A stretch of 64,000 bases of DNA from Octopus sinensis (lineage: Eukaryota): assembly GCF_006345805.1 (NCBI RefSeq), contig NC_043017.1, positions 18,848,001-18,912,000 on the forward strand. Direction: 5' to 3'. Below are positions 1,937-63,680 of the stretch, in pieces. A program made the translations under genes and the position numbers. Below the pieces are notes generated by a model. It was not told the origin of the DNA, searched no databases, and saw only the letters and a program-made list of their open reading frames with translations. Positions within the stretch are counted from its first letter, which is position 1. Each line of letters starts with the position of its first letter.

Positions 1937-4333
1937 TTATTTTTCTGTGTGAATAAACAGATGTGCAGATAAGTGACATTTCTGAGGAAATGACTTACCG
2001 CACACATCGCAGTCAAATGGCTTCTCTCCTGTGTGAATACGTTTATGTTTAGTTAAGCTCCTTGTTAAAGTGAATGATTTACCACAGTAATCACAGTGAT
2101 ATGGCTTCTCCCCTGTATGACTGCGTTTGTGTATAGTTAAGTTATTTGATACTGTGAATGATTTACCACAGATATCACAACTGTATGGTTTCTCTCCAGT
2201 ATGAATGTATTTGTGTCTAGTTAAATCACTACTTTGAGAGAATGATTTACCACAGATATCACAGTGATACGGCTTCTCACCTGTATGAATATGTATGTGT
2301 ACTGTCAATGCATCTCTACGTGAAAATGATTTACCACAGATATCACAGTCATATGGCTTCTCACCTGTGTGAATGCGTTTGTGAGCAGTTAAATCACCAC
2401 TGTGAGAGAATGGCTTACCACAAATGTCACAAAGATATGGTTTCTCACCTGTATGAATACGTTTGTGACTCGTTAAGTTACCTGGATCAGACAATGTTTT
2501 GCCACAGATATCACAGTGGTATGGCTTTTCTCCTGTATGAATACGCTTATGTGTAATTAACTTACTTCTAACAGCAAATGATTTACCACAGATGTTACAG
2601 GGATATGGCTTTACTCCTGTATGAATATATTTGTGAGCAGTTAAGTGACTACTAATAGAGAATGATTTACCACAGACATCACACTGAAATGGCTTCTCCC
2701 CAGTATGAAAGCGTTTGTGTACTGTTAATTTACTAATCGAAGACATTGATTTACCACAGATGTCACAGTGATATGGCTGTCCTCCTGTATGAATATATTT
2801 GTGTATATTCAAGTGACCACTTCGAGAGAATGATTTACCGCATATATCACAGTGATATGGCTTCTCTCCCGTATGAGAGCGTATATGAGTAGTTAAGATA
2901 CTACTTTTAGAAAATGATTTTCCACAGATATCACAATCATATGACCTCTTACTTGTATGAATGCATTTATGTCGAATTAAGGGACCTCTCTGACTAAATG
3001 ATTTACCACAGCTCTCACACTTATATAGTTTCTCTCCTGTATGAATACGTTTGTGCCTAGTTAACTCACTATTTCTAGAAAACGATTTACTACAGACTTC
3101 ACAAGGAAACGACTTCTCTACTTTATGAATATGTCTGTGTCTAGAAAGCTCGCTACTTGCAGAAAATGACTTATCACAAATATCACAGTGATATCTCTTC
3201 TCATCTGTATGAATGATTTTGTGTTTATTCAAGTGTCTTTTTGCAGAGAATGATTTATCACAGGTATCACAGTGATATGGCTTCTCACCTGTATGAATGC
3301 GTCCGTGGATAGTTAAGGAATTCCTATTAGAGAATGATTTGCCACAGATATCACACTGATATGGTTTCTCGCCTGTATGAATACGTACATGAATAGTTAA
3401 ATTACTACTTCGAGAAAATGATTTACCACAGATGTCACAATGATGAGATTTTTCACCTGTAGGAATGCATTTGTGTCTAATTAAGTTACCTTTCTGAGTG
3501 AATGATTTATCACAGAGATCACAGTGATATGGTTTCTCTCCTGTATGAATATGTTTATGTTCAGCTAACTCAGTACTTCCAGAGAATGATTTACCACAGA
3601 TATCACATAGATGTTGTTTTTCTTTTGTATGAATATGCTTGTGTCTAGTTAAATCACTACTTCCAGAAAATGACTTACCACAGATATCACAGTGATATGG
3701 CTTCTCACCTGTATGAATGCGTTTGTGCATATTTAAGTCACTACTTGTAGAAGAGGATTTACCACAGATGTCACAATGAAATGGTTTTTCTCCAGTATGA
3801 ATCCGTTTGTGTTTAGATAAATCATCTTTCCGAGAGAATGATTTACCACAGTAATCACAACAATATGGTTTTATCCCTGTATGTATGCTTTGGTGAAAAG
3901 TCAAATGAATTCTTTGAGAGAAGGATTTCCCACAGACTTCACAGTGATATGGCTTCTCTCCTGTGTGAATGATTCTATGTCTAGTTAAGTCACCTCTTGC
4001 AGAGAATGATTTGCCACAGACATCACAATGATATGGCTTTTCGCCAGTATGTATCCGTTTGTGTATAGTCAGGGCATTTTTGTTAGAGATTGCTTTGCCA
4101 CAGATATCACAATGATGTGGCTTGTCTCCTGTATGGGTACTACTCTGAGCAGTTATGGGACTTGTTTCAGACAGTGATATACCTATGGTACCACTATGTG
4201 TAGATATCTCTCCCTTGACTTGCAGCATATCATTAGGAAAATCAATGTCTTCAGATTCTGTTTTTATATGAATTGGTGTCTCACATAATTCACTTTTAAT
4301 CACAATTGGTGTCTCATGTAATTCATATTCCAT
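1937..4333 (-). CDS. C2H2 zinc-finger gene 1 (26 finger repeats, single coding exon)
   Basis: ORF track 1937..4348 opens on GTG; the first ATG is at 4333, with an in-frame TAA upstream. Tandem CxxC-x12-HxxxH fingers with TGEKP linkers; finger 8 ends HKCIP. Confidence 0.95.
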
Positions 4334-4749
4334 AATTATTCTTCTCACTTTTAACTCTTATTGTCTACTTCTATATTTCCATCAGCTGTGATCTTTGTTG
4401 TATTGAATTAATCTTCCTTCACTCTTTAAAAGATGATAAATACTGACGATGAATCTCAAGTAAAATATTCTTTCGTGCCAATGTCATCTGATATTTCTGA
4501 AATAATAGAGAAACAATAAGACATATAGGTGATACTTAAAACAGAGATTCAACAGTAAAAAACAGTGATGAATGGCAAATATAGCTATTTAGCTCAACAG
4601 CTTCACTTTTTAATCTGCTACCTTAAATCATAATCACTACACAAAACCTACTTGATCTGCACATATATCACAGACTACGGCTACATCTTTACATTGTCTA
4701 ACATTATCTATGTTAAACTACAGAATAGTTGAAGATAACATTCAGCTCT

Positions 4750-11069: not shown

Positions 11070-11910
11070 AGAATCAAAGGGCCTTAGCAAAAACCAAAGT
11101 CATAGTAAGTAGGAAGGTAGATAAATCACAAATTCCCTCAGGTAGATAGCTCAGCTCAATCTGTAGAAAAGGTGTAAGTAGAAACTCCATAAGATGTACC
11201 CAGTGTAAACTTTGGACACACAAAAGATGCAGCAACATCAAAGGAAGATTAACAGAAAAACTAACTTCTATAATGGAATGTGCACAGGCATAATAAATGC
11301 TGAACAAGTGTGGAAAATAGACTCCATCAACTACCAGGGGGGCAAGCTAGAGGTAGTAGTTAGCTTCTGGTATCTAAGTAACCAGGTTAGTGGTGAAGGT
11401 GGTTGTTCCGAGAGTGTAGCCATAAGTATAAGATTAGAGTTCCTTCCCCTGCTTGCAACAAAGGGCCTCTCTCTCAGAGTCAAAGGCAGATTGTTTGATG
11501 CCTGTGCGTGAACAGCTATGCTGCATAGCAATGAAACATGGGCTGTAACAGCCGAGGACATGCATAGGCTTGAGAGAAATGAAGCCAGTGTGCTTTGCTG
11601 GATGTGCAATATCAGCTGGCATGTTCAACAGAGTGTAAACATCTTGAGAGAAAAGTTAGGCATAAGAGGAATCAGATGCAGTGTGCAAGAGAGACTCCAC
11701 TGGTATGGTTATGTGATGCATATGTATGAGGACAGCTGTGTAAAGAAGGGCCAATCTTTAACTGTGGAAGGGACCTGTGGTAGAGGTAGACCCAGGAAGA
11801 CATTGGATGAAGCATCATGACCTTTGAACTTAGAACCTCACAGAGGCAATGACTAGTGACAGAGGCCTTTGGCAATGTGCTCTACTTAAGAAGACCCATC
11901 AAGCCAAGTG
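11070..11910 (+). mobile_element. RTE LINE 3' fragment
   Basis: Peptides LPLLATKGLSLRVKGRLFDAC and HSNETWAVTAEDMHRLERNEAS...GRGRPRKT. Confidence 0.85.
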
Positions 11911-15966: not shown

Positions 15967-18078
15967 TTATACTTCTGCATGAATACATACATGTGTAGCT
16001 AAGAGATGTTTCCGAGAAAATGATTTACCACAGATATAACATTCATATGGCTTTTCATCAGCATGAATATACTTGTGACAAGTCAAGTCACTAGATCGAG
16101 AGAATGATTTACCACAGATACCACAGTGATATGGCTTCTCTCCTGTATGAATTCGTACGTGGGTAGTTAAGGAATTTCTATAAGAGAATGATTTACCACA
16201 AATATCACAATGATATGGCTTTTCTCCTGTATGAACATATTTGTGTATAGTTAAGTCATTACTCTGAGAGAATGATTTACCACATATCTCACAGTGATAT
16301 GGCTTGTCTCCTGTATGAGTCCGAATGTGAGTAGTTAACTCACTACTTTGTGAGAATGATTTACCACAGATATCACAGAGATAAGGTTTCTCTCCTGTAT
16401 GAATTCGCTTGTGAGTAGTTAAATGGCATCTTCTGTTGAATGATTTCCCACAGATGTCACAGTGATATGGCTTCTCACCTGTATGAATATATCTATGAGT
16501 AGTTAAGTCACTACTTTTACAAAATGATTTACCACAGATTTCACAGTGATATGGCTTTTCTCCTGTATGAATTCGTTTGTGTACAGTTACAGTACTTGAA
16601 TGAGAGAAAGATTTACCACAAATATCACAGTGATATGGTTTTTCTCCTGTATGAATATATTTGTGAGTGGTCAAGTGACTATTTCGAGAAAATGATTTAC
16701 TACAGATATCACAATGATATGGCTTATCTCCTGTAAGAATCTGTTTTTGTATAGTTAAAGCATTTGTATGAGAGAAAGATTTGTCACAAACATCAGGTGA
16801 AATTAGCTTTTCTCCTGAATGAATATGCTTATGTTTAGTTAAGTAACTGCTTCGAGAGAATGATTTACCACAGATTTCGCATGGATATGTCTTCGCACTG
16901 GTATGAATGCGTTTGTGTATGGTTAAGGTGCTTCTACAAGAAAATGATTTATTACAGATATCACAGCAATATGGCTTCTCTCCTGTATGAGTACGTATAT
17001 GGGTAGTTAAGTTACGACTATGGAGAAATGATTTCCCACAGACATCACAGCGATGTGGCTTCTCACCTGTATGACTGCATTTGTGTATAGCTAAGACATT
17101 TCTATCACTGAATGATTTTGCACAAATATCACATGCATATGGCTTCTCTCCTGTATGAATATGTTTATGTTTGATTAAGACATGTCTATAAGTGAATGAT
17201 TTACGACAAATTGTACAGTGATATGGCTTCTCACCTGTGTGAATACGTTTGTGAATAGTTAAAGTTCCTGTTCTAGAGAATGATTTGCCACAGATATCAC
17301 ACTGATATGAATTATCACCTGTATGTATATGTTTGTGTATTGTTAAGGAATTTTTATGAGTGAATGATTTACCACAGATGTCACATCGGTATGGCTTCTC
17401 ACCTGTATGAATGCGTATGTGGGTAGTTAAGTCACTACTTCCAGAAAATGATTTACCACAGATGTTACAGTGATATGGCTTTTCACCTGTATGTACACGC
17501 TTGTGTTTATTCAAGTCACTACTTGCAGAGAAGGATTTACCACAGATATCACAATGAAATGGTTTTTCTCCAGTATGAATTCGTTTGTGTTTAGATAAAT
17601 CATATTTCCGAGAGAATGATTTACTACAGAAATCACAACAATATGGTTTTATCCCTGTATGTATGCTTTTGTGAAAAGTCAAATGAATTCTTTGAGAGAA
17701 GGATTTCCCACAGACTTCACAGTAATATGGCTTTTCTCCTGTGTGAGTAATTTTGTGCCTAGTTAAATGAGTTTTTGCAGAGAATGATTTACCACAGATA
17801 TCACAGTGATAAGACTTTTCACCCGTATGGATACGTTTGTGTTTAGTTAAGTAACTACTTGAAATGAATGATTTACCACAGATATCACAGTGATATGGCT
17901 TCTCCCCCGTATGAATACGTTTGTGTACAGTTAAAGCTTTTCTTTGCGTGAACGATTTACCACAGATATCACAGTGGTTTGGTGTTTTACCCATTCCTTC
18001 TAGTATGTCATTCGGAAATGCTATACTTTCAGACTCTGTTTTAATTATAATTGATTTCTCACATAATTCATTTTCCAT
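15967..18078 (-). CDS. C2H2 zinc-finger gene 2 (24 repeats, repeat 15 degenerate)
   Basis: 703-aa uninterrupted ORF with a 33-aa N-terminus followed by tandem fingers. Confidence 0.95.
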
Positions 18079-19640: not shown

Positions 19641-20299
19641 TTATTATTGTTGTTGTTACATATTTTTTCCTCTTTTTCCATCTGTTCTTTCTCCTCGTTC
19701 CTTTCTGTAAAAGAGCGTACGCTAGACTTTAAAAAAAAACAAAAACAGGAGTTACGTAATCACCATAGTCACTTATATTCACTCACAGTTGTTTCTGCTA
19801 TAAGCAACGCACACAGCTGAGTGCTTGCACCATATTTTATAACTTCTTCAGAAGCTCTGTGTGTGTGTGTTGTTATTGTGTCTACTTGTCTTGACATAGC
19901 ATAATACCTGTGCTACTATCATACAAGCAGCATTATGTTTCCAGTCTTACATAAAAATATTTGTGGCCAAGAAAAACTATTATCTGTTTAGAAATTGGTT
20001 AAGTGCTGCAAGCTGTAAAAAATTTTTATGAATAACATCAAATCCTTGTGGAAAAGTGAATATCAAAACAGTGATGATTATGATGATAGCTAGGGCATAT
20101 GCTCTTTCAGGTGCAGAGACAGGAAAAATTTTGCTCCTCTATTACATGTTAGGTAGAGGTTTCTGGATCTATGAATAATCCTGTCAAATATAACCTGATG
20201 AATTTCTGACAAAGCCACCTCTAAGTGAGAAGTTACACATACTGCAACAGTTAGAATTCCTTCAACTAAAGCTCTCTATAGTCACCATTCCCTGCATCA

Positions 20300-21780
20300 A
20301 CATCATCGTTTAATGTCCGCTTTCCATGCTAGCATGGGTTGGACGATTTTGACTGATGGCTGCACCAGGCTCCAATCTTGATCTGGCAGAGTTTCTACAG
20401 CTGGATGCCCTTCCTAACACCAACCACTCCGAGAGTGTAGTGGGTGCTTTTTACATGCCACTGGCACAGGGCCAGTCAGGCAGTACTGGCAATGACCACG
20501 CTCAAATCTTTTTACACATGCCACCGGTACAGGTGCCAATAAGGCGACGCTAGTAAAGATCATGCTTGAATGGTGCCTTTTACATGCCACCGGCACGGAA
20601 ACCAGTTAGCCGCTCAGATGGTGCTCTTGGCACCCTACTAGAACGGGCACAAGTGCCAGTAAGGCGACACTGGTAACAATCACACTCGAATGGTGTCTTT
20701 TATGTGCCACTGTAATGGAAGCCGGTTAGCCGCTCTGTCAATGATCACACTCGTATGGTGCTCTTTGCACCCCGCTAGCATTGATGCCAGTCATCGATTT
20801 TGATTTCATTTCCCTCAACAGGTCTTTGCAAGCAGAGTTTAGTGTCCAAAGGAGGAAAAGGTATGCATAAGTGGGTTGATTACGCTCCTGACATAGGTCA
20901 TGAGCTTATGGTCTCATTTGGCTTGCCAATCTTCTCAAGCACAGCATATTTCCAAAAGTCTCAATCACTAGTCATTTCCTTGGTGAGGCCTAAAGTTCGA
21001 AGGTCGTGCTTCACCACTTTATCCCAGGTCTTCCTGGGTCTACTTCTTCCACAGGTTCCCTTAACCGCTAGGGTGTGGCACTTTTTCACACAGCTATCCT
21101 CATCCATTCTCACCACATGACCATACCAGCACAGTCGTCTCTCTTGCACACCACATCTGATGCTTCTTAGGTCCAACTTTTCTCTCAATGTACTTACACT
21201 TTGTTGAGTATGCACACTGACATTACACATTCATCGGATCATACTGGCTTCATTCCTTGTGAGCTTACGCATGTCCTCAGCAGTCACAGCCCATGTTTTA
21301 CTGCCATGTAGCATGGCTGTTCGCACACAGGCGTCATACAATCTACCTTTTACTCTGAGCGAGAGGCCTTGTCACTAGCAGAGGTAAGAGCTCTCTGAAC
21401 TTTGCCCAAGCTATTCTTATTCTAGCAGCTACACTTTCAGCACACCCTCCCCCGCTACTGACTTGGTCACCTAGGTAATGGAAGCTATCAACTACTTTTA
21501 GTTTTTCTCCCTGGAATGTGGTGGAAGTTGTTCTCTGCACATTTTCAGTGTTTATTGCTCCCGAGCATCTGCCACATACAAAGACTATCTTCCCAGTTAG
21601 CTTTCCGTTGATATTACTGCATCTCTTATGTGTCCATAGCTTATACTGGGTACATCTTAAAGAGTTTCTACCTACGCCTCTACTACAGATTGAGCAGGGC
21701 CATTTACCTGAAGGGATATGTGGTTTGCCTGCCTTCCTACTTATTAGGACTTTGGTTTTAGCTAGGTAGTTAAGAAACTA
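20300..21780 (-). mobile_element. 5'-truncated RTE LINE with 3' UTR
   Basis: RT C-terminus (LREKLDLRSIRCGVQERRLCWYGHVVRMDEDSC...GRSRPRKTW; KVVDSFHYLGDQVSSGGG), a repetitive 3' UTR and a (GAT)n-type end. Confidence 0.85.
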
Positions 21781-22124
21781 ACCCTGTGAACTGAACCAGC
21801 CAATTAGAATGAGTCCCATCAATTCAATGACAACCAAAATTAACCAAAGAGGATGTGAATGTCTTGTTACTCAGAAGTAGGTATCAACTATTTCACAACA
21901 GTTTCTCTCAATTCTGTGAAACTTGAAGTGTGGAGTGCATTTGTGCATGCCTATCAGTATCTCTCTACATATATATATTTGCCAAATTAAAGACAAACAG
22001 GTTGTGGATATATGTAAAAATGTGGGCTTGTATATTTGTTCATACATATATGTACAAATGTTTGTGTATGTTATATACTTCAAAGGAAATTTTCAACCAC
22101 TATTTAAATCAAACATAACTTAGC

Positions 22125-23500: not shown

Positions 23501-23789
23501 TCGGCTGCCACTCTCACACAGATTCACACAACCCTTCATCCTTCTCTAACATTCTCCAACCATGCCTCATCCATCCTCAACCTAGGCACCACACTGACAC
23601 TATGAACATGTCTTTTTCAAAGGCAAGAAATAAAATCAGTACTTGTGCTAAGAAGCCATCATCACAACTACCTTAAATATGAAAAATACTCAACTGGAGA
23701 TATCACAAACACTCCAATTGTATCTAACAACCACTGAAGATCATCCTTGCAAAACCATACCCTTAACAATGCAAGGAACACATCCCAAC

Positions 23790-25090: not shown

Positions 25091-27859
25091 TTATGATTTC
25101 TCTCCAGTAGGAATGCATTTGTGTGTTACCAAGTAACTACTTCGAGAAAATGATTTACTACAGATATCACAGTGATATGGCTTTTCGCCTGTATGGGTAC
25201 GCATATGTTTACTTAATAGACTTGCTAGAGCAAATGATTTGCCACAGCTGTCACAGAGATATGGTTTCCCTCCAGTATGAACATATTTGTGAGTAGTTAA
25301 GTGACCTCTTCTAGCAAATGATTTACCACAGATATCACAGTGATATGGTGTGTCTCCTGTGTGAATAAATTTGTGAGTAGTTAAGTCACTACTTTTACAA
25401 AATGATCTACCACAGATATCACAGTGATATGGCTTCTCTCCTGTATGAATGCGTACATGTATAGTTAATTTACAATTTGAAATGAATGATTTACCACAAA
25501 TATCACAAGCATATGGTTTCTCTCCAGTATGTGTGCGTCTGTGTATAATTAAAGCATTACTATGAGAGAAGGATTTACCACAGATATCACAATGATGTGG
25601 TTTCTCCCCAGTATGAATGCGTTTGTGCTTAGTTAAATCACCAGTTCGGGAGAATGATTTACCACAAATATCACAGTGATAGGGCTTCTCACCTGTATGA
25701 ACACATTTATGTATAACTAAGGCAGCTCTATGACAGAATGATTTATCACACACATCACATGGATATGGCTTGTCTCCTGTATGAATAAATTTGTGTTTTG
25801 TTAAATTACCACTAAAAGAGAAAGATTTACCACACACATCACAGTGATATGGCTTCTCTCCTGTATGAGTGCGCTTGTGTATATGTAAGCTACCACTTGT
25901 AGAAAATGATTTACCACAGATATCACAATATGGCTTCTCTCCATTATGACTTCGTTTGTGATTAGTTAAGAGACTTCTATTAGTGAATGATTTATCACAA
26001 ATAGTGCATGAATGTGGCTTCTTGCCTGTATGAATAAGTTTGTGAGTAGTAAAGTCATTATTTCCAGAGAATGACTCACCACAGATATTGCAGTGATATT
26101 GCCTGCCCACTGTATGAATTCGTTTGTGATTAGTTAAGACATTTTTCCGAGAGAATGATTTACTACAGATATCACAATGATATGGCTTCTCTCCTGTATG
26201 AATTCGTTGGTGTGTAGTTAAGACATCTCTACGGGAGAATGACTTACCACACACATCACAGCAATGTGGCTTCTTGCCTGTATGAATTCGTTTGTGAGTA
26301 GTTAAATTACTTCTTGCAGTGAATGATTTACCACAAATATCACAGTGATATGGCTTTTCTCCTGTATGCGTACGTATGTGGATAGTTAAGTTACGACTTT
26401 GTAAAAATAATTTACCACAGATGTCACAATGATATGGCTTCTCAGCTTTATGACTCCGTTTGTGTATAGTCAAGGCATTTCTATGTGAGAATGATTTACC
26501 ACAGATATAACAGTGATATAAATTATCTCCTGTATGAATGCGTTTGTGTTTATTTAAGCTACTACTAGTAGTGAAAAATTTACCACAGCTTTCACAATGA
26601 AATGGTTTTTCTCCAGTATGAATCCTTGTGTGTTGAGTTATGGCATTTCTATCAGTGAATGATTTATTGCAAATAGTACATGAATATGGCTTCTCACCTG
26701 TATGAATACGTTTGTGAATAGTTAGAGTTCCTGTTCCAGAAAATGATTTACCACAGATATCACAGCGATAGGGCCTTTCCCCCGTATGAATACGTGTATG
26801 TACATTTAAAGATCCTGTTCCAGAGAATGATTTACCACAGATATCACAGCGATGAGGTTTCTCACCTGTATGTATACGTTTGTGAGTATTTAAATTGCTA
26901 CTTCCAGAGAATGATTTACCACATATATCACAGTGATATGGCTTCTCCCCAGTATGAACACGCTTGTGTTTATTCAAATCACTACTTGTAGAGTAGGATT
27001 TACCACAGATATCGCAGTGAAATGGTTTTTCTCCAGTATGAATGCGTTTGTGTTTAGTTAAATCTTGATTTCGAGAGAATGATTTACCACAGAAATTACA
27101 AGAATATGGTCTTACCCCTGTGTGAATGCTCTCATGAAATGTCAAGTGAATTTTTTGAGAGAAGGATTTCCCACAGACTTCACAGTGATATGGCTTCTCT
27201 CCTGTGTGAATAATTTTGTGTCTTGTTATATCAGCTGTTGCAGAGAATGATTTGCCACAGATATCACAGTCATATGGCTTCTCTCCTGTGTGAATGAGTT
27301 TATGTGCAGTTAAGTGACTTGTTGTACAGAAAGATTTACTACAAACATCACAATGATATGGTTTTTCTCCTGTATGAATGATTTTATGTGAAGTTAAGTG
27401 TCCTTTTGTGGAAAACGATTTACCACAGACTTCACAGTGATATGGCTTCTCTCCAGTATGAGTGCGTTTATGTACGGTCAAGGGAGTTTTGTTAGAGAAT
27501 GACTTGCCACAGATATCACAATGATATGGCTTCTCTCCTGTATGTGTGCGTTTGTGAACAGTTAGGGCACTTTTGTTAGAGAATAACTTACCACAGATAT
27601 GACAATGATATGGCTTGTCTCCTGTATGGATAGTACTGTGAGCAGTTATAGGATTTGTTTGAGAGATTGATATGCCAAAGATATCATTATGGCAAGATGT
27701 TTCTCTTGTCTTTTGCAGAGGATCATCTGGAAAATCAATTCTTTCGGACTCTGTTTTAATTTTAAATGGTGTCTCACATACTTCATTTTTGATTATAATC
27801 GGTGTCTCACATAATTCATTTTTAACTACAATTGGTGTCTCATGGAATTCATTTTCCAT
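25091..27859 (-). CDS. C2H2 zinc-finger gene 3 (30 repeats)
   Basis: 922-aa ORF; three N-terminal ETPIxxKxE-type repeats, then tandem fingers. Confidence 0.95.
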   Translation of the reverse strand: MENEFHETPIVVKNELCETPIIIKNEVCETPFKIKTESERIDFPDDPLQKTRETSCHNDIFGISISQTNPITAHSTIHTGDKPYHCHICGKLFSNKSALTVHKRTHTGEKPYHCDICGKSFSNKTPLTVHKRTHTGEKPYHCEVCGKSFSTKGHLTSHKIIHTGEKPYHCDVCSKSFCTTSHLTAHKLIHTGEKPYDCDICGKSFSATADITRHKIIHTGEKPYHCEVCGKSFSQKIHLTFHESIHTGVRPYSCNFCGKSFSRNQDLTKHKRIHTGEKPFHCDICGKSYSTSSDLNKHKRVHTGEKPYHCDICGKSFSGSSNLNTHKRIHTGEKPHRCDICGKSFSGTGSLNVHTRIHTGERPYRCDICGKSFSGTGTLTIHKRIHTGEKPYSCTICNKSFTDRNAITQHTRIHTGEKPFHCESCGKFFTTSSSLNKHKRIHTGDNLYHCYICGKSFSHRNALTIHKRSHKAEKPYHCDICGKLFLQSRNLTIHIRTHTGEKPYHCDICGKSFTARSNLTTHKRIHTGKKPHCCDVCGKSFSRRDVLTTHQRIHTGEKPYHCDICSKSFSRKNVLTNHKRIHTVGRQYHCNICGESFSGNNDFTTHKLIHTGKKPHSCTICDKSFTNRSLLTNHKRSHNGEKPYCDICGKSFSTSGSLHIHKRTHTGEKPYHCDVCGKSFSFSGNLTKHKFIHTGDKPYPCDVCDKSFCHRAALVIHKCVHTGEKPYHCDICGKSFSRTGDLTKHKRIHTGEKPHHCDICGKSFSHSNALIIHRRTHTGEKPYACDICGKSFISNCKLTIHVRIHTGEKPYHCDICGRSFCKSSDLTTHKFIHTGDTPYHCDICGKSFARRGHLTTHKYVHTGGKPYLCDSCGKSFALASLLSKHMRTHTGEKPYHCDICSKSFSRSSYLVTHKCIPTGEKS

Positions 27860-34210: not shown

Positions 34211-37200
34211 TTATTGTTTCTCTCCTGTATGAATTTGCTTATGAGTTGTTAAGCTACTTCCCTGAGAGAATGATTTACCACAGATATCACAGGCATATGG
34301 TTTCTCTCCAGTATGAATGCGTTTATGTGTTATCAAGTAACTACTTCGAGAGAATGATTTACCGCAAATATCACAGGGATATGGCTTTTCTCCTGTGTGA
34401 GTACGCATATGTTTAGCTAACTCACTACTTAGCGCAAATGATTTACCACAGATATCACAGAGATATGGTTTCCCTCCAGTATGAATATACTTGTGAGTAG
34501 TTAAGTGACCCCTTCTAGAAAATGATTTACCACAGACATCACAGTGATATGGTGTGTCACCTGTATGAATAAATTTGTGAGTAGTTAAGTCACTGCTTTG
34601 AGAGAATGATTTCCCACAGATATCACAATGATACGGTTTCTCTCCTGTATGAATGCGTTTGTGTACAGTTAATTTACTCTTTGAAGTGAACGATTTACTA
34701 CAAATATCACAAGAATATGGTCTCTCTCCTGTATGCATGCGTTTGTGTATCGTTAGGGCATTACTATGAGAGAATGGTTTACCACAGATATCGCAGTGAT
34801 GTGGTTTCTCTCCTGTATGAATACGTTTATGTTTAGTTAAATCACCTGTTCGAGAGAATGGTTTACCACAGATATTACAATCATAAGGTTTCTTCCCTGT
34901 ATGAATATTTTTATGCATAGTTAAGATATGTTTGCGAGTGAATGATTTACTACAAATATCACACTGAAATGGTTTCTCTCCAGTATGAATACGTATATGA
35001 GTACTTAAGTCATTACCTCCAGAGAAGGATTTACCACAGATGTCACAAGGATATGGTTTATCTCCTGTATGAATATAGCTGTGTTTTGTTAAACTACTAC
35101 TTCTAGAAAATGATTTACTGCAGATATCACAGTGATATGGCTTCTCTCCTGTATGAATCCGCTTGTGTCTACTTAAGACATTTCTATGAGAGAATGATTT
35201 ACCACAAATAGCACATGAAAATGGTTTCTCCCCAGTATGACTGCGTTTATGAGAAATTAAGTAACTACTTCTATGGAATGATTTACCACAAATATCACAT
35301 TGATATTGTTCTTGTTCTGTATGAGTATGGTTCTGAGTAGTTATGGTTTCTGTTTGAGAGGATGATTTATCACTGATATTACAACTATATGGTATCTCTG
35401 TTGCATGAATATGCTTGTGATTATTTAAGACATTTCTATGAGAGAATGATTTACCACAGATATCACAATGATATGGCTTCTCTCCAGTATGAATTCGTTC
35501 ATGTGTAGTTAAGACATCTCTTCGAGCAAACTTGTCACCGCAAACATCACAGCGATATGGCTTCTCACCTGTATGTATACGCTTGTGAGTAGTTAAGTTA
35601 CTCCTTCCAGAAAATGATTTACCACAAATATCACAGTGATATGGCTTCTCCCTTGTATGAGTACATATATGGGTAGTTAAGTTACGGTTTTCTAAAAATA
35701 ATTTACCACAGATATCACAACGATATGGCTTCTCGTTCCTATGAATGAATTTGTGTATAGTTAAGGCATTCCTATCAGTGAATGATTTACTACATTTATC
35801 ACATGGATAATGCTTCTCTTCAGAATGAATATGTTCGTGACTAGTTAAGGTTCCTGCATGAGAGAATGATTTACCACAGATGTCACAGCTATATGACTTC
35901 TGTCCTGCATGAATACGTTTGTGTGAAGATAAGACATTTCGATGAGAGAATGATTTACCACAGATATCACAATGATATGGCTTCTCTCCTGTATGAATTC
36001 GTTCATGTGTAGTTAAAACATCTCTACGAGAGAATGAATTTCCACAAATATCACAGCGATACGGCTTTTCACCTGTATGTACTCTCTTGTGAGTAGTTAA
36101 GTTACTCCTTCCAGAAAATGATTTACCACAAATATCACAGTGATATGGCTTTTCTCCAGTATGAATACGTATGTGGGTAGTTAAGTTCCGGCTTTCCAAA
36201 AAAAATTTACCACAGATATCACAATGATATGGCTTCTCATAACTATGTGTGCCCTTGTGTATAGTAAAAGCAGTTTTATCAGTGAATGATTTGCTACAAA
36301 TATCACATGAATATTGCTTTTCTCCTGCATGAATAAATTTGTGTTCAATTAAGTTACTATCTCCAGAAAACGATTTACCACAGATATCACATTGGTATTG
36401 CTTCTCTACTGTATGAATCTGTTTGTGTTTATTTAATGCATTTCTATCAGAGAAGGATTTACTGCAAATAGTACATGAATAAGGCTTCTCACCAGCATGA
36501 ATACGTTTGTGAGTAGTTAAGGTTCTTCCTTCAGAGAATGATTTACCACAGATATCACAGTGATATGGTTTCTCTCCTGTATGTGTACGTTTGTGAGTAA
36601 TTAAGTGACTACTACCAGAAAATGACTTACCACAGATATTACATTGATATGGCTTCTCCCCTGTATGAACACGCTTGTGCTTATTTAAATCACTCCTTGT
36701 AAAGAATGATTTGCCACAGATTTCACAGGGAAATGGTTTTTCTCCAGAATGAATGCGTTTATGCTTAGTTAAGTCTTGATTTCGAGAAAATGATTTACCA
36801 CAGAAATTACAAGAATATGGTCTTAGTCCTGTATGTATGCTTTTGTGAAAAGTCAAGTGAATTCTTTGAGAGAAGGATTTCCCACAGACTTCACAGTGAT
36901 AAGGTTTTTCTCCTGTATGAACAATTTTGTGTGTAGTTAAGTGAGCTAGTGCAGAAAATGATTTACCACAGATTTCACAGTGGTGTGGTTTTTCTTTCGT
37001 ATGAACAATCTTGTGTGAAGTTAAGTGAACTGTTGCAGAGAATGATTTACCACAGACATCACAAGAATATGGCTTCTCACCTGTATGGATGTTTTTATGT
37101 AAAGTTAGATGAATTCTTTGAGAGAAAGATTTACCACAGATATCACAATATGGTTTCTGTCCTATATGAATGCTTTTATGTATAGTTAAATTATTTCTTT

Positions 37201-37648
37201 GAGAGAAAGATTTACCACAGATATCACAGTGATATGGCCTTTCCCCTGTATGAGTACGTTTGTGTACAGTTAGGGCACTATTTTGAGAGAATGATTTACC
37301 ACAGATATTACAGTGATATGGCTTTTCTCCAGTATGGATGCGTTTGTGTGTAGTTAGGGCATTTTTGTTAGAGAATGATTTACCACAGATATCACAATGT
37401 GGTTTGTTTTCTGCATGAATAGAACTGTGAGCAGCTTTAGGACTTGTTTCAGAGATTGATATACCAAAAATATTACTGTGTGTAGAGGTTTCTTCTGTCT
37501 CTTGCTGCAATTCATTATGAAAACCAATCCTTTCAGACTCTGTTTTAATTTTAACTGGTGTCTCATATAATTCATTTTTAATTATAATCGGTGTCCCGCA
37601 TAATTCATTTTCAATTTTAATTGGTGTCTCATAGAATTCTTTTTCCAT
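34211..37648 (-). CDS. C2H2 zinc-finger gene 4 (38 repeats, repeat 25 degenerate)
   Basis: 1145-aa ORF; contains an internal six-finger tandem duplication. Confidence 0.95.
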
Positions 37649-45637: not shown

Positions 45638-47017
45638 TTATGGTTTATCTCGTGTATGAATATGTTCGTGTTTAGTTAAGCCACTTTTTCGACAGAATGA
45701 TTTACCACAGATATCACAGGGATATGGCCTCTCCCCAGTATGAATGCGTTTGTGTGTATTTAAGTCACTACTTTGAGAGAATGATTTAGGACAAATGTCA
45801 CAGTGATATGGTTTTTCTCCTGTGTGAGTACGTATATGTATAGTTAAATCACTACGTAAGGCAAAAGCTTTACCACACACATCACAGAGATAAGGTTTTC
45901 CCCCAGTATGAATATATTTGTGAGTAGTTAAGTGTCCTCTTCTAGAGAATGATTTACCACAGATATCACAGTGATATGGTGTGTCACCAGTATGAATATA
46001 TTTGTGAGTAGTTAAGTCACTACTTTGAGAGAATGATTTACCACAGATATCACAGTGATATGGTTTCTCTCCTGTATGAATGCGTTTGTGTACTGTTACT
46101 TTACTCTTTGAAGTGAATGATTTACCACAAATATCACAAGAATATGGTTTCTCTCCCGTATGCATGCGTTTGTGTATAGTTAAGGCATTACTATGAGAGA
46201 ATGTTTTACCACAGATATCGCAGTGATGTGGTTTCTCTCCTGTATGAACACGTATGTGAGTAGTTAAATCACCACTTCGAGAGAATAATTTACCACAAAT
46301 ATCACAATGATATGGTGTTTCCCCTGTATGAATGCTTTTATGCATAGTTAAGAGATCAACATGAGAGAATGATTTACCACAAATTTCACACTGAAATGGC
46401 TTCTCCCCTGTATGAGTGCTTTTGTGTACAGTTAAGGCATTTCTTTCGGTGAATGATTTGCTACAAATATCACAGGGATATGGCTTCTTTCCTGTATGAA
46501 TATGTTTGTGTTTTGTTAAATTACTTCTTCCAGAAAACGATCTCCCACAAACATCACATTGATATGGTTTCTCACCTGTGTGAATGCGCTTGTGTACATC
46601 TAAGCCACTCTTTGTAGAGGACAATTTACCACAGACATCACAGCGATATGGTTTCTCACCTGTGTGCACACGTATGTGTTTAGTTAGGGCATACACTTTA
46701 GAGAATGATTTACCACAGACATCACAATGATATGGTTTCTCTCCTGTATATATAGTAGTGTGAGCAGTTCTGGGACTTGCTTGAGAGATTGACATACTAA
46801 AGTTATCACTGTGCGTAGATGCTTCTCCTTTCTCTTGCAGTGTCTTACTAGGAAAATCAATCCTTTCAGACTCAGTGTTAATTTCAATTGATGTTTCATT
46901 TTTTTTAATTGAAATGTTAACAATATCACTGTGTCTATACGTTTCTTCTGTCTCTTGCTCCATATTGTTACGAAAATCAATCCTTTCAGACTGTTTTAAT
47001 TTGAATTTGTGTTGCAT
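45638..47017 (-). CDS. C2H2 zinc-finger gene 5 (13 fingers; ancestral start lost)
   Basis: ORF track opens on TTG at 47032; the first in-frame ATG is at 47017. The region holding the ancestral MEN-type start is replaced by a SINE at about 47050-47168. Confidence 0.8.
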
Positions 47018-47049
47018 ATAATTGATTTTCAATTATAATTGGTGTTAAA

Positions 47050-50579: not shown

Positions 50580-51767
50580 ATGGAAAACACATTATGTGAC
50601 AAATCATTTACGCTTCAGATAGAGTCTGAAAACATTAATTTTGCTGATAAAATGTTGAAAGGGACAAGAAAAGCATCGAACTACTGTGATATCTGTGGTA
50701 AATCATTCGCACACAGAAACTCTTTAACTGCTCACAAACGTATTCATACAGGGGAGAAGCCACATCAGTGTAATATTTGTGGCAAATCATTTATTTCAAG
50801 TTGTCACTTAACTACTCATATACGTACTCATACAGGAGAGAAGCCTTATCACTGTGATATCTGTGGTAAATCATTTGCTCATAGTACTCACTTAACTGTA
50901 CATAAATATATTCATACAGGAGGGCAGCCATACCATTGTGATATCTGTGGTAAATCAATGTCTTCAAACAGTAAATTAAAAGTGCACAAACGTTTCCATA
51001 CTGGAGAGAAGCCATTTCAGTGTGACATCTGTGGGAAATCATTCTCTATTAGTAGTCACTTAACTACTCACAAATATATTCATACAGGAGTGAAACCATA
51101 TCACTGTGATATCTGTGGTAAATCATTCTCTGTAGGGAGTAACCTAAATACTCACAAACGACTTCATACAGGAGAAAAGCCATACCACTGTGACATCTGT
51201 GGCAAAACCTTATCTGATTCAGGTAACTTAACTAGTCACAAACGTATTCATACAGGAGAGAAACGATACCTTTGTGATATTTGTGGTAAATCATTTTCTC
51301 ACAGTGGTCGTTTAACTACTCACAAACGCATTCACACAGGAGAAAAGCCATATCACTGTGAAATTTGTGGTAAAGCATTCACTACCACAGGTGAAGTAAC
51401 TGTTCACCAACATATTCATACAGGAGACAAGCCATATTCATGTGATATCTGTGGTAAGTCATTTCCTCGTAGAGAATCATTACCTATTCACAAACGTATA
51501 CATACAGGTGAGAAGCCATATCGCTGTGATATCTGTGGTAAATCATTCGCAGTGTCAACTACCTTAACTATACACAAGCGCAGTCATACAGGAGAGAAAC
51601 CATATCACTGTGATACCTGTGGTAAATCATTCACTACAACAAGTTACTTGACTAAACACAAACACATTCACACACGAGATGTGTCATATCACTGTGATAT
51701 CTGTGGCAAATCATTTTCTCAGAAACGTCATTTCACTGCCCATGCATTGGTTCATAGAGAAAAATAA
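50580..51767 (+). CDS. C2H2 zinc-finger gene 6 (13 fingers)
   Basis: 395-aa ORF starting [10 protein letters not shown]. Confidence 0.95.
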
Positions 51768-56915: not shown

Positions 56916-58104
56916 ATGGAAAATACATTATGTGAAAAAACCATTTACACTTGAGACGGAGTCTGAAAACATGAATTTTGCAAATGAAATGCCAAAAGAG
57001 ACAGGAAAAAAGTCAAATGAGTGTGATATCTGTGGTAAATCATTCGCACACAGAAACTATTTATCTGCTCACAAACGTATTCATACAGGGGAGAAACCAC
57101 ATCAGTGTAATATTTGTGGTAAAGCTTTCATTTCAACTGGTCACTTAACTACTCATATACGTACACATACAGGTGAGAAGCCTTATCACTGTGATATCTG
57201 TGGTAAATCATTTGCTCGGAGTCATCAGTTGACTGTCCATAAATACATTCATACAGGAGGGCAACCATTTCATTGTGATATCTGTGGTAAATCTATATCT
57301 TCAAAGAGTAAATTAACTGTACACAAACGCTTTCATACTGGAGAGAAACCATTTCACTGTGATATTTGTGGTAAATCTTTCTCTATTAGTAGTCACTTAA
57401 CTACTCACAAATATATTCATACAGGAGTGAAACCATATCACTGTGATATCTGTGGTAAATCATTCTCTGTAGGAAGTAGCCTAAATACTCACAAACGACT
57501 TCATACAGGAGAAAAGCCGTATCATTGTGATATCTGTGGCAAAACATTATCTGATCAAGGTAACTTAGCTAGTCACAAACGTACTCATACAGGAGAGAAA
57601 CGATACCTCTGTGATATTTGTGGAAAATCATTCTCTTACAGTAGATGTTTAATTGTTCACAAACGCAGTCACACTGGAGAAAAACCATATCACTGTGAAA
57701 TCTGTGGTAAATCATTTGCTACTACACGTACAGTAACTGTTCACCAACACATTCATACAGGAGATAAGTCATATTCATGTGATATCTGTGGTAAGTCATT
57801 TCTTCGTAGAGAGTCATTACCTATTCACAAACGTGTGCATACAGGTGAGAAGCCATATCACTGTGATATCTGTGGTAAATCATTCTCAGGATTAACTAAC
57901 TTAACTCTTCACAAACGCAGTCATACAGGGGAGAAACCATATATCTGCGACACCTGTGGTAAATCATTCACTACAACAAGTTACTTAACTAAACACAAAC
58001 ACATTCACACACGAGATGTGCCATATCACTGTGATATCTGTGGTAAATCATTTTCTCAAAAGCGTCATTTCACTGCCCATGCATCAATTCATACAGAAAA
58101 ATAA
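56916..58104 (+). CDS. C2H2 zinc-finger gene 7 (13 fingers; +1 frameshift after codon 7, or restart at ATG 56971)
   Basis: ATG at 56916 (MENTLCE) matches the starts of genes 6 and 8 but is out of frame because of an A6 run at 56935-56940. The finger ORF is open from 56932 to 58104. Confidence 0.8.
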
Positions 58105-62564: not shown

Positions 62565-63680
62565 ATGGAAAATACATTATGTGAAAATCCATTTACACTT
62601 CAGGCAGAGTCTGAAAATATGAATTTTGCAAATGAAATGCCAAAAGAGACAGGAAAAAAGTCAAATGAGTGTGATATCTGTGGTAAATCATTTGCACGCA
62701 GAAACTATTTAACTGCTCACAAACGTATTCATACAGGGGAGAAGCCACATCAGTGTAATATATGTGGTAGAGCTTTTATTTCAACTGGTCACTTAACTAC
62801 TCATATACGTACACATACAGGAGAGAGGCCTTATCACTGTGATATCTGTGGTAAATCATATGCTCGTAGTAATCAGTTAACTGTACATAAATACATTCAT
62901 ACAGGAGGTCAGCCATGCCATTGTGATATCTGTGGTAAATCTATGCCTTCAAAGAGTAAATTAACAGTACACAAACGCTTTCATACTGGAGAGAAACCAT
63001 TTCACTGTGATATTTGTGGTAAATCTTTCTCTATTAGTAGTCACTTAACTACACACAAATATATGCATACAGGAGAGAAGCCATATCACTGTGATATCTG
63101 TGGTAAATCATTCTCTGTAGGAAGTAACCTAAATACTCACAAACGACTTCATACAGGAGAAAAGCCATACCACTGTGATATCTGTGGGAAAACATTATCC
63201 GATCAAGGTAACTTAAATAGTCACAAACGTACTCATACAGGTGAGAAAAGATACCTTTGTGATATTTGTGGTAAATCGTTCTCTGATAGTAGGTCTTTAA
63301 CTGCACACAAACGCAGTCACACTGGAGAAAAGCCATATCACTGTGAAATCTGTGGTAAATCATTTGCAACCACACGTACAGTAACTGTTCATGAACATAT
63401 TCATACAAGAGACAAGTCATATTCGTGCAATATCTGTGGTAAGTCATTTCCTCGTAGTGAATCATTATTTATTCACAAGCGTATACATACAGGTGAGAAG
63501 CCATATCGCTGTGATATCTGTGGTAAATCATTCACAATATCAACCACAATATCAACTACTTTGACTACACACAAATGTAGACATACAGGGGAGAAACCAT
63601 ATCACTGTGATATCTGTGGTAAAGCATTTTCTCAAAAACGTCACTTCACTGCCCATACATCTACTCATACAGGAAAATAA
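62565..63680 (+). CDS. C2H2 zinc-finger gene 8 (12 repeats)
   Basis: 371-aa ORF, a close paralog of genes 6 and 7. It lacks the TTTSYL finger and has an ISTT duplication in repeat 11. Confidence 0.95.

What the first reader, a model, noticed from the sequence alone, without database searches (positions are those of the whole stretch)
4250..4333. Unannotated 11-aa N-terminal repeat, each unit ending in a SUMO consensus: candidate effector module
Seen: gene 1 has [29 protein letters not shown]. Gene 3 (27740-27859) has [40 protein letters not shown]. Gene 4 (37530-37648) has three units, and gene 2 has one ([14 protein letters not shown]). Units are 33 bp and vary in number. Nearly every unit ends in psi-K-x-E, the last with an acidic tail, and most carry a TP site. 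Genes 6-8 lack the lysine (LQIESE, LETESE, LQAESE). Established: psi-K-x-E is the UBC9 SUMOylation consensus, and SUMO often mediates transcriptional repression. Inference: copy-number-tunable SUMO arrays may stand in for KRAB, giving repressor (1-4) and non-repressor (6-8) subtypes.
Basis: partly seen in the sequence, partly recalled or inferred. Interest (0 to 1): 0.7.

Follow-up and report, generated by a model that had tools for sequence, protein, structure and literature searches.

The report
Repeated leader on octopus zinc-finger genes
A cluster of octopus zinc-finger genes starts with a short acidic leader found only in octopuses; in three genes an 11-residue piece of it is repeated and carries a textbook SUMO-attachment motif, which makes a testable but unproven candidate for the missing repressor module of these genes.

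Summary
The window is Octopus sinensis chromosome CM016879.1 and holds eight tandem C2H2 poly-zinc-finger ORFs. g1, g3 and g4 start with 2, 3 and 3 in-frame 33-bp units (E-L-C-E-T-P-psi-x-psi-K-x), and g2 has one. Each leader ends in E-S-E-x-I-D-F. All 10 psiKxE sites of the eight proteins lie in the leaders; the 4,724 finger-array residues have none.

The repeat is a local elaboration of a wider, undescribed leader of about 30 residues (M-E-N-E-L-C-E ... D-F-P-D). I found this leader only in Octopus ZNFs (O. sinensis, O. vulgaris, O. bimaculoides). It has no Pfam or PDB match and no predicted fold.

The SUMO reading is plausible, because psiKxE tiles are proven repression modules in human factors. 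It is not established here:
- Across 22 leaders the Lys column is K in only 52% and the Glu column E in 59%. M-E-x-E-L-C and one Phe are far better conserved.
- Conserved unit codons are identical, so their recurrence reflects ancestry.
- Leader dN/dS is about 0.6.
- Two of the eight leaders are broken.
- SIM, strict PDSM and strict synergy-control patterns fail.

The repressor versus non-repressor split is unsupported. Verdict: a new lineage-specific ZNF-associated leader, analogous to FiNZ, of moderate interest.

The parts
1937..4333 (-). g1: ZNF ORF of 798 aa from its ATG, with 25 fingers. The leader has two units.
   Evidence: The C-terminal half is 72% identical to, and collinear with, the whole g6 array.
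4292..4324 (-). g1 unit 1, [11 protein letters not shown] (psi-psi-psi-K-x-E with the next Glu)
4259..4291 (-). g1 unit 2, [11 protein letters not shown]
4238..4258 (-). g1 acidic tail ESEDIDF, holding the family-invariant E-S-E and Phe
4118..4213 (-). g1 degenerate zinc finger between the leader and finger 1. It has no Cys ligands.
   Evidence: local alignment to the finger consensus scores 64, and 0 of 2000 shuffles reach that score.
15967..18078 (-). g2: ZNF ORF of 703 aa, with a single unit at 18037-18069 and tail ESESIAF at 18016-18036
25091..27859 (-). g3: ZNF ORF of 922 aa. Three units at 27818-27850, 27785-27817 and 27752-27784; tail at 27731-27751.
34211..37648 (-). g4: ZNF ORF of 1145 aa. 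Three units at 37607-37639, 37574-37606 and 37541-37573; tail at 37520-37540.
45638..47032 (-). g5: ZNF ORF with a decayed leader. It has no MEN start, reads [11 protein letters not shown] at 46853-46873, and carries an internal duplication of the tail plus pseudo-finger.
   Evidence: The recorded gene model starts at ATG 47017 and gives a merged 1895-aa product.
50580..51767 (+). g6: ZNF ORF of 395 aa. Leader [21 protein letters not shown] has no Lys at the motif position.
   Evidence: This exact product is on record for GCA_006345805.1.
56916..58104 (+). g7: ZNF ORF from 56932. Its ancestral ATG at 56916-56918 is in another frame.
   Evidence: No gene is called here in the record.
62565..63680 (+). 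g8: ZNF ORF of 371 aa. Leader [21 protein letters not shown].

Best explanation
WHAT IT IS (shown). The feature is the N-terminal leader of a tandem cluster of C2H2 poly-zinc-finger genes on Octopus sinensis chromosome CM016879.1. Leader and fingers sit in one coding exon.

The leader is about 30 residues long, acidic and without a predicted fold. I found it only in Octopus. Its consensus is M-E-N-E-L-C-E-x-x-psi-[K/E]-psi-[K/E]-x-[E/Q]-S-[E/K]-x-psi-D-F-P-D, and it abuts finger 1.

In one local subfamily an 11-codon piece (E-L-C-E-T-P-psi-x-psi-K-x) was duplicated in frame. The first, middle and last units are each most similar between genes, so the duplication happened before g1, g3 and g4 separated. 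The result is 1 to 3 units per gene.

HOW IT MOST LIKELY WORKS (inferred).
- The leader is a short transcriptional effector peptide.
- In g1-g4 the Lys residues of the psiKxE sites are the only consensus SUMO sites in these proteins. They lie in an exposed acidic context.
- UBC9 would conjugate SUMO to them.
- SUMO would then recruit silencers that carry SUMO-interacting motifs, of the SETDB1, Mi-2/NuRD or HP1 type, to the DNA bound by the finger array. This would bypass the TRIM28 adaptor that KRAB needs.
- More units would mean more acceptor sites.

The invariant acidic F-centred tail probably adds a second contact that does not depend on SUMO. Leaders without the Lys retain this tail.
For: - Anatomy and repeats.
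- Genome of origin.
- Family distribution. An HMM of the eight leaders, run against 1.84 billion representatives, gave about 14 true leader matches. Every one whose source was looked up is Octopus, and each has one unit. Further copies were harvested from flanking loci.
- No known domain or structure matches.
- No fold is predicted. In a single-sequence AF2 model, residues 1-75 have block-mean pLDDT of 27-35, and fingers appear after that.
- Motif matches: 10 psiKxE sites in g1-g4, 5 of the hydrophobic-cluster type, 5 with an acid at K+5, and 8 preceded by Pro within 4 residues.
- All psiKxE sites are in leaders and none is in 4,724 array residues.
- psiKxE exceeds composition-matched shuffles in the window (10 against 1.4). 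It also does so in 15 other Octopus leaders, with 9 sites in 9 sequences against 2.6 expected. It occurs in two registers, columns 10-13 or 12-15. That pattern could reflect motif turnover under selection.
- Arg never replaces Lys in either Lys column.
- Literature. SUMO motifs were required in 149 of 166 human repression domains, and a 10-residue IKEE tile is sufficient (10.1101/2022.08.26.505496). SUMO-modified Sp3 recruits Mi-2, HP1 and SETDB1, and KRAB acts through SUMOylated TRIM28 and the SETDB1 SIM (PMC7915335). SUMO links target recognition to SetDB1 in Drosophila (10.1101/533091).
- The cyprinid FiNZ leader begins MAFIKEE, decoded from the published morpholino.
Against: - Across 22 leaders the acceptor column is K in 11 of 21 (also E7, Q2, N1). 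The +2 column is E in 13 of 22 (also Q8). The residues under the strongest constraint are M1, E2, L5, C6, F21 and K31, and SUMO does not explain these.
- Swaps between K and E fit an amphipathic strand as well as they fit a modification site.
- Conserved unit codons are identical. Unit dN is about equal to dS.
- Leader dN/dS is about 0.6, against 0.25-0.3 in the finger arrays.
- Two of the eight leaders are disrupted while their arrays stay open: g5 and g7.
- The strict PDSM pattern and the strict synergy-control pattern are not met.
- psiKxE is short. In the human screen 12.3% of inactive 80-residue tiles also carry it (10.1101/2022.08.26.505496).
- There are no expression, SUMO-proteomic or reporter data for any of these genes.
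Confidence: 0.35

Rival explanations
1. The working part is the acidic, hydrophobic tail around the invariant Phe (E-S-E-x-psi-D-F-P-D-[DE]-psi-L), together with the invariant M-E-N-E-L-C-E start. This would be a docking peptide for an unknown cofactor: an acidic activation domain or a co-repressor-binding linear motif. The repeated units would be spacer or avidity elements, and their Lys would be incidental.
For: - F21 is present in 20 of 21 leaders. M1, E2, L5 and C6 are the other low-entropy columns. E-S-E and F are the only invariant residues among the eight window leaders.
- Tails carry 3-5 acidic and 3-4 bulky hydrophobic residues in 14 positions. This fits the activation-domain grammar of aromatic or Leu residues interspersed with acidic, Pro and Ser residues (10.1101/2022.08.26.505496).
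- Leaders without Lys (g6-g8, P0124, P0130, P0134, P0140, P0152) keep these parts.
Against: - It does not explain why psiKxE is over-represented relative to shuffles, nor why it recurs in two registers.
- It does not explain why the duplicated piece is exactly the strand that carries the motif.
- No known co-repressor motif was recognised, and Pfam found nothing.
Confidence: 0.3
2. The leader is only weakly constrained. The 33-bp repeat is a recent slippage or unequal-crossover product that was carried along by gene duplication. Unit number has no functional meaning, and psiKxE is a by-product of an alternating hydrophobic and charged strand in a K/E-rich, A-rich coding context.
For: - Conserved codons are identical among units, and unit dN is about equal to dS.
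- Leader dN/dS is about 0.6.
- g5 and g7 have broken leaders but intact arrays.
- K and E interchange at columns 11 and 13.
- No library representative has more than one unit.
Against: - The one-unit leader is kept in many paralogues on at least six records of three Octopus species, with near-invariant M-E-x-E-L-C and Phe.
- dN/dS is below 1.
- The three-unit state is older than the g3/g4 split and has stayed in frame.
Confidence: 0.2
3. The units are SUMO-interacting motifs: hydrophobic I-V-I or I-I-I cores with acidic flanks. A tandem array would bind SUMO or poly-SUMO chains, as RNF4-type SIM arrays do, rather than being modified.
For: - There are three consecutive aliphatic residues in 5 units, at 11-residue spacing, with acidic residues and Ser/Thr nearby.
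Against: - No unit matches the SIMa, SIMb or SIMr patterns, or the V/I-x-V/I-V/I core. The position after the core is Lys, not an acidic residue (patterns from PMC3395311).
Confidence: 0.05
4. The units are short beta-strands that pair with one another or with another ZNF, giving dimerisation or oligomerisation. Alternatively, the conserved Cys or His of each unit supplies metal ligands to the Cys-less pseudo-finger that follows.
For: - Columns 10-13 alternate psi-x-psi-x.
- Column 6 is Cys in 16 of 20 leaders, and unit position 3 is C, H or Y.
- The Cys-less finger keeps its His residues in g3, g4 and g5.
- Beta-strands next to single C2H2 fingers mediate dimerisation in Drosophila factors (PMC12774644, title and abstract only).
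Against: - AF2 predicts no structure for residues 1-75, though this was a single-sequence run.
- The Cys is equally conserved in one-unit leaders that have no pseudo-finger.
Confidence: 0.07

Closest known systems
[quoted passage not shown]
   Same: - Both are short (28 aa for FiNZ), Glu-rich and lineage-restricted.
- Both sit at the extreme N-terminus of a massively expanded poly-ZNF family and match no known domain (PMC10547256).
- FiNZ starts MAFIKEE, so it also carries a psiKxE.
- The effector mechanism is unknown for FiNZ too. A TRIM33 co-IP has been reported (PMC11603059).
   Different: - I tested no sequence homology between the two.
- FiNZ is on its own exon upstream of the finger exon. 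Here leader and fingers share one ORF.
- FiNZ is not reported as a tandem repeat.
- FiNZ-ZNFs have knock-down evidence for transposon repression. These octopus genes have none.
SUMO-consensus repression modules of human transcription factors (Sp3 inhibitory IKEE site, the MGA 10-residue IKEE tile, and 149 of 166 mapped repression domains)
   Same: - Both have a psiKxE in a disordered acidic region of a DNA-binding factor.
- In human cells such short tiles are sufficient for repression (10.1101/2022.08.26.505496; PMC7915335).
   Different: - Those sites are single, non-repeated and experimentally shown to be modified.
- Here there are up to three tandem copies, no experimental evidence, and a Lys that is not conserved across the family.
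KRAB domain (PF01352) of tetrapod KZNFs
   Same: - Both are N-terminal effector modules of rapidly duplicating clustered poly-ZNF genes.
- KRAB silencing ultimately runs through SUMO (auto-SUMOylated TRIM28) to SETDB1 (PMC7915335).
   Different: - KRAB is a domain of about 75 residues that binds TRIM28.
- There is no Pfam match here even at E <= 10, and no predicted fold.
- The length here is about 30 residues.
Synergy-control motifs (Pro-flanked [IV]KxE) of nuclear receptors and other factors
   Same: - Eight sites here have Pro 0-4 residues upstream of [IV]KxE.
- They lie next to an acidic, activation-domain-like segment.
   Different: - The strict pattern, as I recall it, has the downstream Pro within 0-3 residues. 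This is not met: the Pro is 4 residues away in four sites and farther in the rest.
Tandem SIM arrays (RNF4 type)
   Same: - Both have short aliphatic cores repeated at a spacing of about 11 residues, with acidic neighbours.
   Different: - All SIM patterns fail here. The units fit the acceptor motif, not the binding motif.

Membership tests
Canonical SUMO consensus site (psiKxE) | A large hydrophobic residue at -1, Lys, any residue, then Glu at +2 | tested here: met
   There are 10 matches in the leaders of g1-g4 and none in g5-g8. Definition from PMC3395311 and PMC7915335.
Canonical SUMO consensus site (psiKxE) | The site is exposed or extended so that UBC9 can reach it | tested here: inconclusive
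   AF2 gives block-mean pLDDT of 27-35 for residues 1-75, with no fold. This was a single-sequence run, so it is consistent with disorder but weak evidence.
Canonical SUMO consensus site (psiKxE) | The Lys is actually conjugated to SUMO | not testable with these tools
   This needs in vitro or in-cell SUMOylation, or mass spectrometry.
In 22 Octopus leaders, column 13 is K11/E7/Q2/N1 and column 15 is E13/Q8/H1.
Hydrophobic-cluster SUMO motif (HCSM) | Three or more hydrophobic residues directly before KxE | tested here: met
   The matches are IVIKSE, IIIKTE, IVVKNE and IIIKNE (twice), which is 5 of 10 sites.
Phosphorylation-dependent SUMO motif (PDSM) | psiKxExxSP, with the phospho-Ser five residues after the Lys | tested here: not met
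   There is no match. The units read psiKxExxETP, with Glu at K+5 and T-P one residue later.
Negatively-charged-residue-dependent SUMO motif (NDSM) | An acidic cluster just downstream of psiKxE | tested here: inconclusive
   With my own regular expression, the last unit of g1 and of g3 passes, and an acid at K+5 is present in 5 sites. The published definition is not a fixed pattern.
Synergy-control motif | P-x(0-4)-[IV]KxE-x(0-3)-P (pattern recalled from memory) | tested here: not met
   The upstream half is met in 8 sites. The full pattern is met only if the downstream gap is relaxed to 4 residues, which gives 4 sites.
SUMO-interacting motif (SIM) | SIMa, SIMb or SIMr patterns, or a V/I-x-V/I-V/I core | tested here: not met
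   There is no match in any unit (patterns from PMC3395311).
KRAB, SCAN, BTB, ZAD or any other Pfam family | A significant profile match over the leader | tested here: not met
   hmmscan of five leaders at E <= 10 gave only a sub-threshold DUF4097 hit (16.9 bits against a cut-off of 22.9) on the pseudo-finger part of g1. The PDB search found only a designed zinc finger, also on the pseudo-finger.
FiNZ | Short acidic N-terminal sequence heading an expanded ZNF family | tested here: met
   PMC10547256.
FiNZ | Encoded by its own exon upstream of the finger exon | tested here: not met
   Leader and fingers form one continuous ORF.
FiNZ | Sequence homology to the FiNZ consensus, and restriction to cyprinids | not tested
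   No FiNZ profile was available. Only the first seven residues could be decoded. None of the true leader matches in the HMM search came from fish.

The most novel reading that the evidence does not exclude
Leaders that carry SUMO-acceptor sites may be a recurrent, convergent answer to building silencing poly-ZNF families without KRAB and TRIM28. Examples would be the Octopus leader with its tandem psiKxE units, the cyprinid FiNZ leader (MAFIKEE), and the psi-K-x-E arrays ahead of other ZNF arrays (for example P0166 with IKVE, IKEE, VKEE and LKSE in its first 67 residues). In each case the DNA-bound ZNF would itself be SUMOylated. It would then recruit SIM-bearing SETDB1, NuRD or HP1 directly, and repeat number would set silencing strength.
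Probability: 0.1. Interest if true: 0.75.

Novelty: new variant of a known kind. Interest (0 to 1): 0.4.

Why it matters
The expansion of C2H2 zinc-finger genes is a signature of octopus genomes. The papers I could search do not describe an effector domain for these genes.

A conserved leader found only in Octopus would be useful in three ways:
- It gives a handle for re-annotating these genes. Current gene models merge or miss them.
- It allows many paralogues to be targeted at once, as was done for FiNZ.
- It allows cofactors to be fished out.

If the SUMO reading holds, it would show a route to ZNF-directed silencing that needs no adaptor, and a natural copy-number series with which to test dosage.

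Tried and rejected
Searches that led nowhere:
- Word-indexed search with the g3 leader and with the g2 leader. Almost no candidates and no hits. The length filter and word index are unsuited to a 30-residue leader.
- Whole-g2 search. It was swamped by vertebrate KZNFs and gave no cephalopod in the top 120, so it was useless for collecting paralogues.
- Exact look-ups of the window proteins in the cluster table. All were reported absent, even though g6 is on record.
- Exact look-ups of g1, g2 and g3. None is on record.
- Rfam scan of the window. No matches.
- Literature searches for FiNZ with SUMO, and for cephalopod ZNFs with SUMOylation. Only noise.
- A full-text search for the string MENELCE. 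Zero papers.

Hypotheses considered and rejected:
- KRAB or another Pfam domain.
- A SIM array.
- The 'linker' as a novel region. It is a Cys-less finger.

Limits and caveats:
- Only 22 leaders could be collected.
- In one search the g7 row joined two reading frames, for display only. I discarded that alignment and redid it with the open frame alone. No conclusion uses.
- The library clusters proteins at 50% identity and holds no eukaryotic genomes to scan. The absence of multi-unit leaders, and of non-Octopus leaders, is therefore weak evidence.
Full report
WHERE THE WINDOW COMES FROM

The 395-aa product of the ORF at 50580-51767 is on record, residue for residue, in GenBank assembly GCA_006345805.1, record CM016879.1 (34.1 Mb). 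Named relatives from the same assembly are labelled Octopus sinensis. The recorded ranges place the window at about 18,848,001-18,912,000 of that record.

The window is AT-rich, with about 0.31-0.44 GC. It holds eight long ORFs that are arrays of 84-bp C2H2 finger repeats. I call them g1 to g8:
- g1: 1937-4333, minus strand
- g2: 15967-18078, minus strand
- g3: 25091-27859, minus strand
- g4: 34211-37648, minus strand
- g5: 45638-47032, minus strand
- g6: 50580-51767, plus strand
- g7: 56932-58104, plus strand
- g8: 62565-63680, plus strand

They carry 11 to 37 fingers each.

CHECKING THE OBSERVATION

- g1 starts at ATG 4331-4333. It has two 33-bp units, [11 protein letters not shown] (4292-4324) and [11 protein letters not shown] (4259-4291), then ESEDIDF (4238-4258).
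- g3 and g4 have three units each. Tandem Repeats Finder reports both arrays with period 33 and 3.1 copies, at 82% and 78% matches.
- g2 has one unit.
- g6, g7 and g8 have a homologous single unit without the lysine.

Small corrections:
- g4's first unit has Glu where the others have Lys, and its psiKxE is shifted two residues (IKIE).
- g2's unit has K-S instead of T-P.
It has lost the MEN start and carries an internal duplication of the tail plus pseudo-finger.
- The ATG of g7 (56916-56918) is one base out of frame with its ORF.

The motif count is well beyond what composition predicts. Leaders hold 10 psiKxE against 1.44 expected from within-sequence shuffles. All 10 are in the 459 leader residues, and none is in the 4,724 residues of finger array.

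The units are copies by descent, however. The conserved positions use the same codon every time (GAA x9, GAG x8, ACA x8, AAA x8). Repetition of K and E among units therefore says nothing about selection.

Units group by position rather than by gene. First units differ by 4-5 nucleotides between genes. Middle units differ by 3. Last units differ by 3-6. Units of different positions differ by 5-10, mostly 7-10. So the multi-unit state predates the g1/g3/g4 duplications, and the single unit of g2 corresponds to the last unit.

WHAT IT BELONGS TO

The leaders match no Pfam family even at E <= 10. The only result is a sub-threshold DUF4097 hit on the pseudo-finger part of g1. No solved structure matches apart from a designed zinc finger, again on the pseudo-finger.

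I built a profile from the eight leaders (alignment A1) and ran it against 1.84 billion representative proteins. It gave 51 hits at E <= 0.001.
- Most hits match only the finger-like part of the profile.
- About fourteen match the leader itself, at their own N-terminus.
- Every one whose source I looked up is from Octopus sinensis, O. vulgaris or O. bimaculoides.

Fetching the genomic neighbourhoods of seven of these hits gave a few more copies.

All of these leaders have one unit. Aligned with the window's leaders, 22 in all, the consensus is M-E-N-E-L-C-E-x-x-psi-[K/E]-psi-[K/E]-x-[E/Q]-S-[E/K]-x-psi-D-F-P-D ... K-T-S-Y, running straight into finger 1.

The lowest-entropy columns are M1, E2, L5, C6, F21 and K31. 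The window's lysine (column 13) is K11/E7/Q2/N1, and its +2 Glu (column 15) is E13/Q8/H1. A second register, K at column 11 with E at column 13, gives psiKxE in six other leaders: IKCE twice, VKVE, IKSE, VKSE and FKCE. It also accounts for g4 unit 1.

The 11-residue repeat is therefore a local, in-frame amplification of the strand segment of a wider leader that I found only in Octopus. I found no description of this leader in the papers I could search on cephalopod ZNF expansions or metazoan ZNF evolution. A full-text search for its first seven residues returned nothing.

CONSTRAINT

Between g1, g3 and g4 the leader has dN/dS of 0.60-0.66, against 0.24-0.33 for blocks of five fingers. So it is constrained, but weakly.

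Two of the eight leaders (g5 and g7) are disrupted while their arrays remain open. A single-sequence AlphaFold model of g3 residues 1-140 gives block-mean pLDDT of 27-35 over residues 1-75, and finger-like strands appear only after that. This fits a disordered peptide, though a single-sequence model is weak evidence.

TESTING THE SUMO READING

The motif definitions come from PMC3395311 and PMC7915335.
- Canonical psiKxE: met at 10 sites.
- Hydrophobic-cluster subtype (psi-psi-psi-KxE): met at 5 sites.
- Acidic residue at K+5, the position of the phospho-Ser in PDSM: present at 5 sites.
- Strict PDSM (psiKxExxSP): not met.
- Strict synergy-control pattern: not met. The upstream Pro is present at 8 sites, but the downstream Pro is one residue too far.
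- All SIM patterns: not met. This removes the rival that the units bind SUMO instead of accepting it.

In the other Octopus leaders psiKxE is again enriched over shuffles: 9 sites in 9 of 15 sequences, against 2.6 expected. These sequences are homologous, so the test is not independent. The inverted motif and psi-E-x-E are enriched as well, the latter trivially because of the M-E-N-E start.

Arg never replaces Lys in either Lys column, although Arg is the commonest residue at column 18. This is a hint only.

BACKGROUND THAT MAKES THE IDEA REASONABLE

- In a tiling screen of human regulators, SUMOylation motifs were needed for repression in at least 149 of 166 repression domains that contain them. 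A 10-residue tile with IKEE is sufficient. However, 12.3% of inactive tiles also contain the motif (10.1101/2022.08.26.505496).
- SUMO-modified Sp3 brings in Mi-2, HP1 and SETDB1. KRAB-ZNFs themselves work through auto-SUMOylated TRIM28 and the SIM of SETDB1 (PMC7915335).
- SUMO links target recognition to SetDB1 in flies (10.1101/533091).
- The closest analogue, the 28-residue Glu-rich FiNZ leader of about 700 zebrafish ZNFs, has an unknown mechanism (PMC10547256). The published translation-blocking morpholino decodes to MAFIKEE, which is also a psiKxE. A TRIM33 co-IP has been reported for FiNZ proteins (PMC11603059).

VERDICT ON MECHANISM

The anatomy, ancestry and distribution are shown. 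The function is inferred.

My best single account, at confidence about 0.35, is this. The leader is a short effector peptide. In g1-g4 its psiKxE lysines accept SUMO and recruit SIM-bearing silencers, and unit number sets the number of acceptor sites.

The main rival, at about 0.3, is that the invariant M-E-N-E-L-C-E start and the acidic Phe-centred tail form the real docking surface and the lysines are incidental. The tail has 3-5 acidic and 3-4 bulky hydrophobic residues in 14 positions, which fits activation-domain grammar. This rival is the only one that explains which residues are best conserved.

A near-neutral leader is at about 0.2. Strand pairing or metal binding is at about 0.07, and a SIM array at about 0.05.

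g6-g8 retain every strongly conserved leader position.

COMPARISON WITH KNOWN FAMILIES AND NOVELTY

It works like FiNZ and KRAB: an N-terminal module of a clustered, fast-duplicating ZNF family. At the motif level it resembles the Sp3 and MGA type of SUMO-site repression tiles.

It is not a member of KRAB or of any Pfam family. It fails one defining feature of FiNZ, the separate exon, and homology to FiNZ could not be tested.

I rate it a new variant of a known kind: a previously undescribed ZNF-associated leader found only in Octopus, with a tandem-repeat subfamily. Interest is moderate at 0.4. The leader is a useful handle on a famous gene expansion, and the SUMO idea is cheap to test. But the evidence for SUMO is only a motif match, and the family-wide conservation points elsewhere.

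Noticed in passing
window 4118-4213 (g1). The same place in g3, g4 and g5 lies between the acidic tail and finger 1.: The long 'linker' of g1, g3, g4 and g5 is a degenerate zinc finger that has lost both Cys ligands. In g3, g4 and g5 it keeps the His pair; in g1, g3 and g5 it keeps the TG(D/E)KP linker. Alignment scores to the finger consensus are 55-82, and 0 of 2000 shuffles reach them. It explains most of the non-leader hits in the HMM search.
   Followed up: yes
window 56916-56932 (g7) and 46874-47032 (g5): The ancestral ATG-GAA-AAT start of g7 is one base out of frame with its 390-codon ORF. g5 has lost the MEN start, and its leader holds a duplicated tail plus pseudo-finger block of about 39 residues. 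Both arrays are still open. They could be young pseudogenes, assembly errors in homopolymers, or genes using other start codons.
   Followed up: partly
window about 40580-47017 (L009 1-6438, minus strand): The recorded gene model starts at g5's internal ATG (47017) and continues past the locus end, giving a 1,895-residue product. It therefore merges g5 with downstream genes. g7 has no recorded gene. The exact products of g1, g2 and g3 are not on record. The leaders of this cluster are largely missing from the annotation.
   Followed up: partly
window 1940-3100 (g1 residues about 413-798) compared with 50580-51764 (g6): The C-terminal half of g1 is 72% identical to, and collinear with, the entire g6 protein, including unusual fingers ([24 protein letters not shown]). 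g1 therefore looks like a mosaic or fusion of a g2/g3-type gene with a g6-type array.
   Followed up: partly
about 150-240 nt upstream of the ATG of g1, g5 and g6 (for example window about 4515-4540 for g1): A conserved polypyrimidine tract ends in ...ttattatttcag, and a conserved 5' leader (...atcaacaaagatc.aag.tgatggaaat... and ...gagaagaataatt before the ATG) is shared by the paralogues. In-frame stops precede every ATG. This suggests a 5'-UTR intron and a single coding exon. No RNA evidence was available.
   Followed up: partly
proteins P0121, P0125 and P0148 (O. sinensis and O. vulgaris): There is a second, different leader on Octopus ZNFs: M-E-[KR]-S-[EK]-K-[LI]-x-E-L-I-x-P-E ... directly before finger 1. 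Octopus ZNFs may therefore have several leader classes.
   Followed up: no
proteins P0166, P0150 and P0135 (hits; species not looked up): Non-octopus poly-ZNF proteins have several psiKxE sites in an acidic region ahead of the fingers. P0166 has IKVE, IKEE, VKEE and LKSE within its first 67 residues, including I-K-V-E-T-P. Across 162 stored ZNF proteins, psiKxE density is 0.42 per 100 residues before the fingers and 0.12 within them.
   Followed up: partly
window 11212-11820 and 20000-24000: Intergenic ORF fragments look like retroelement debris. A block of 0.40-0.44 GC shows strongly negative GC skew. I did not identify either.
   Followed up: no
L005 20326-25389 (O. sinensis CM016888.1): A histone gene group (H2A-like, H2B- or H3-like, and a CENP-T or TAF-fold gene) lies next to a 35-finger ZNF that carries the leader.
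   Followed up: no
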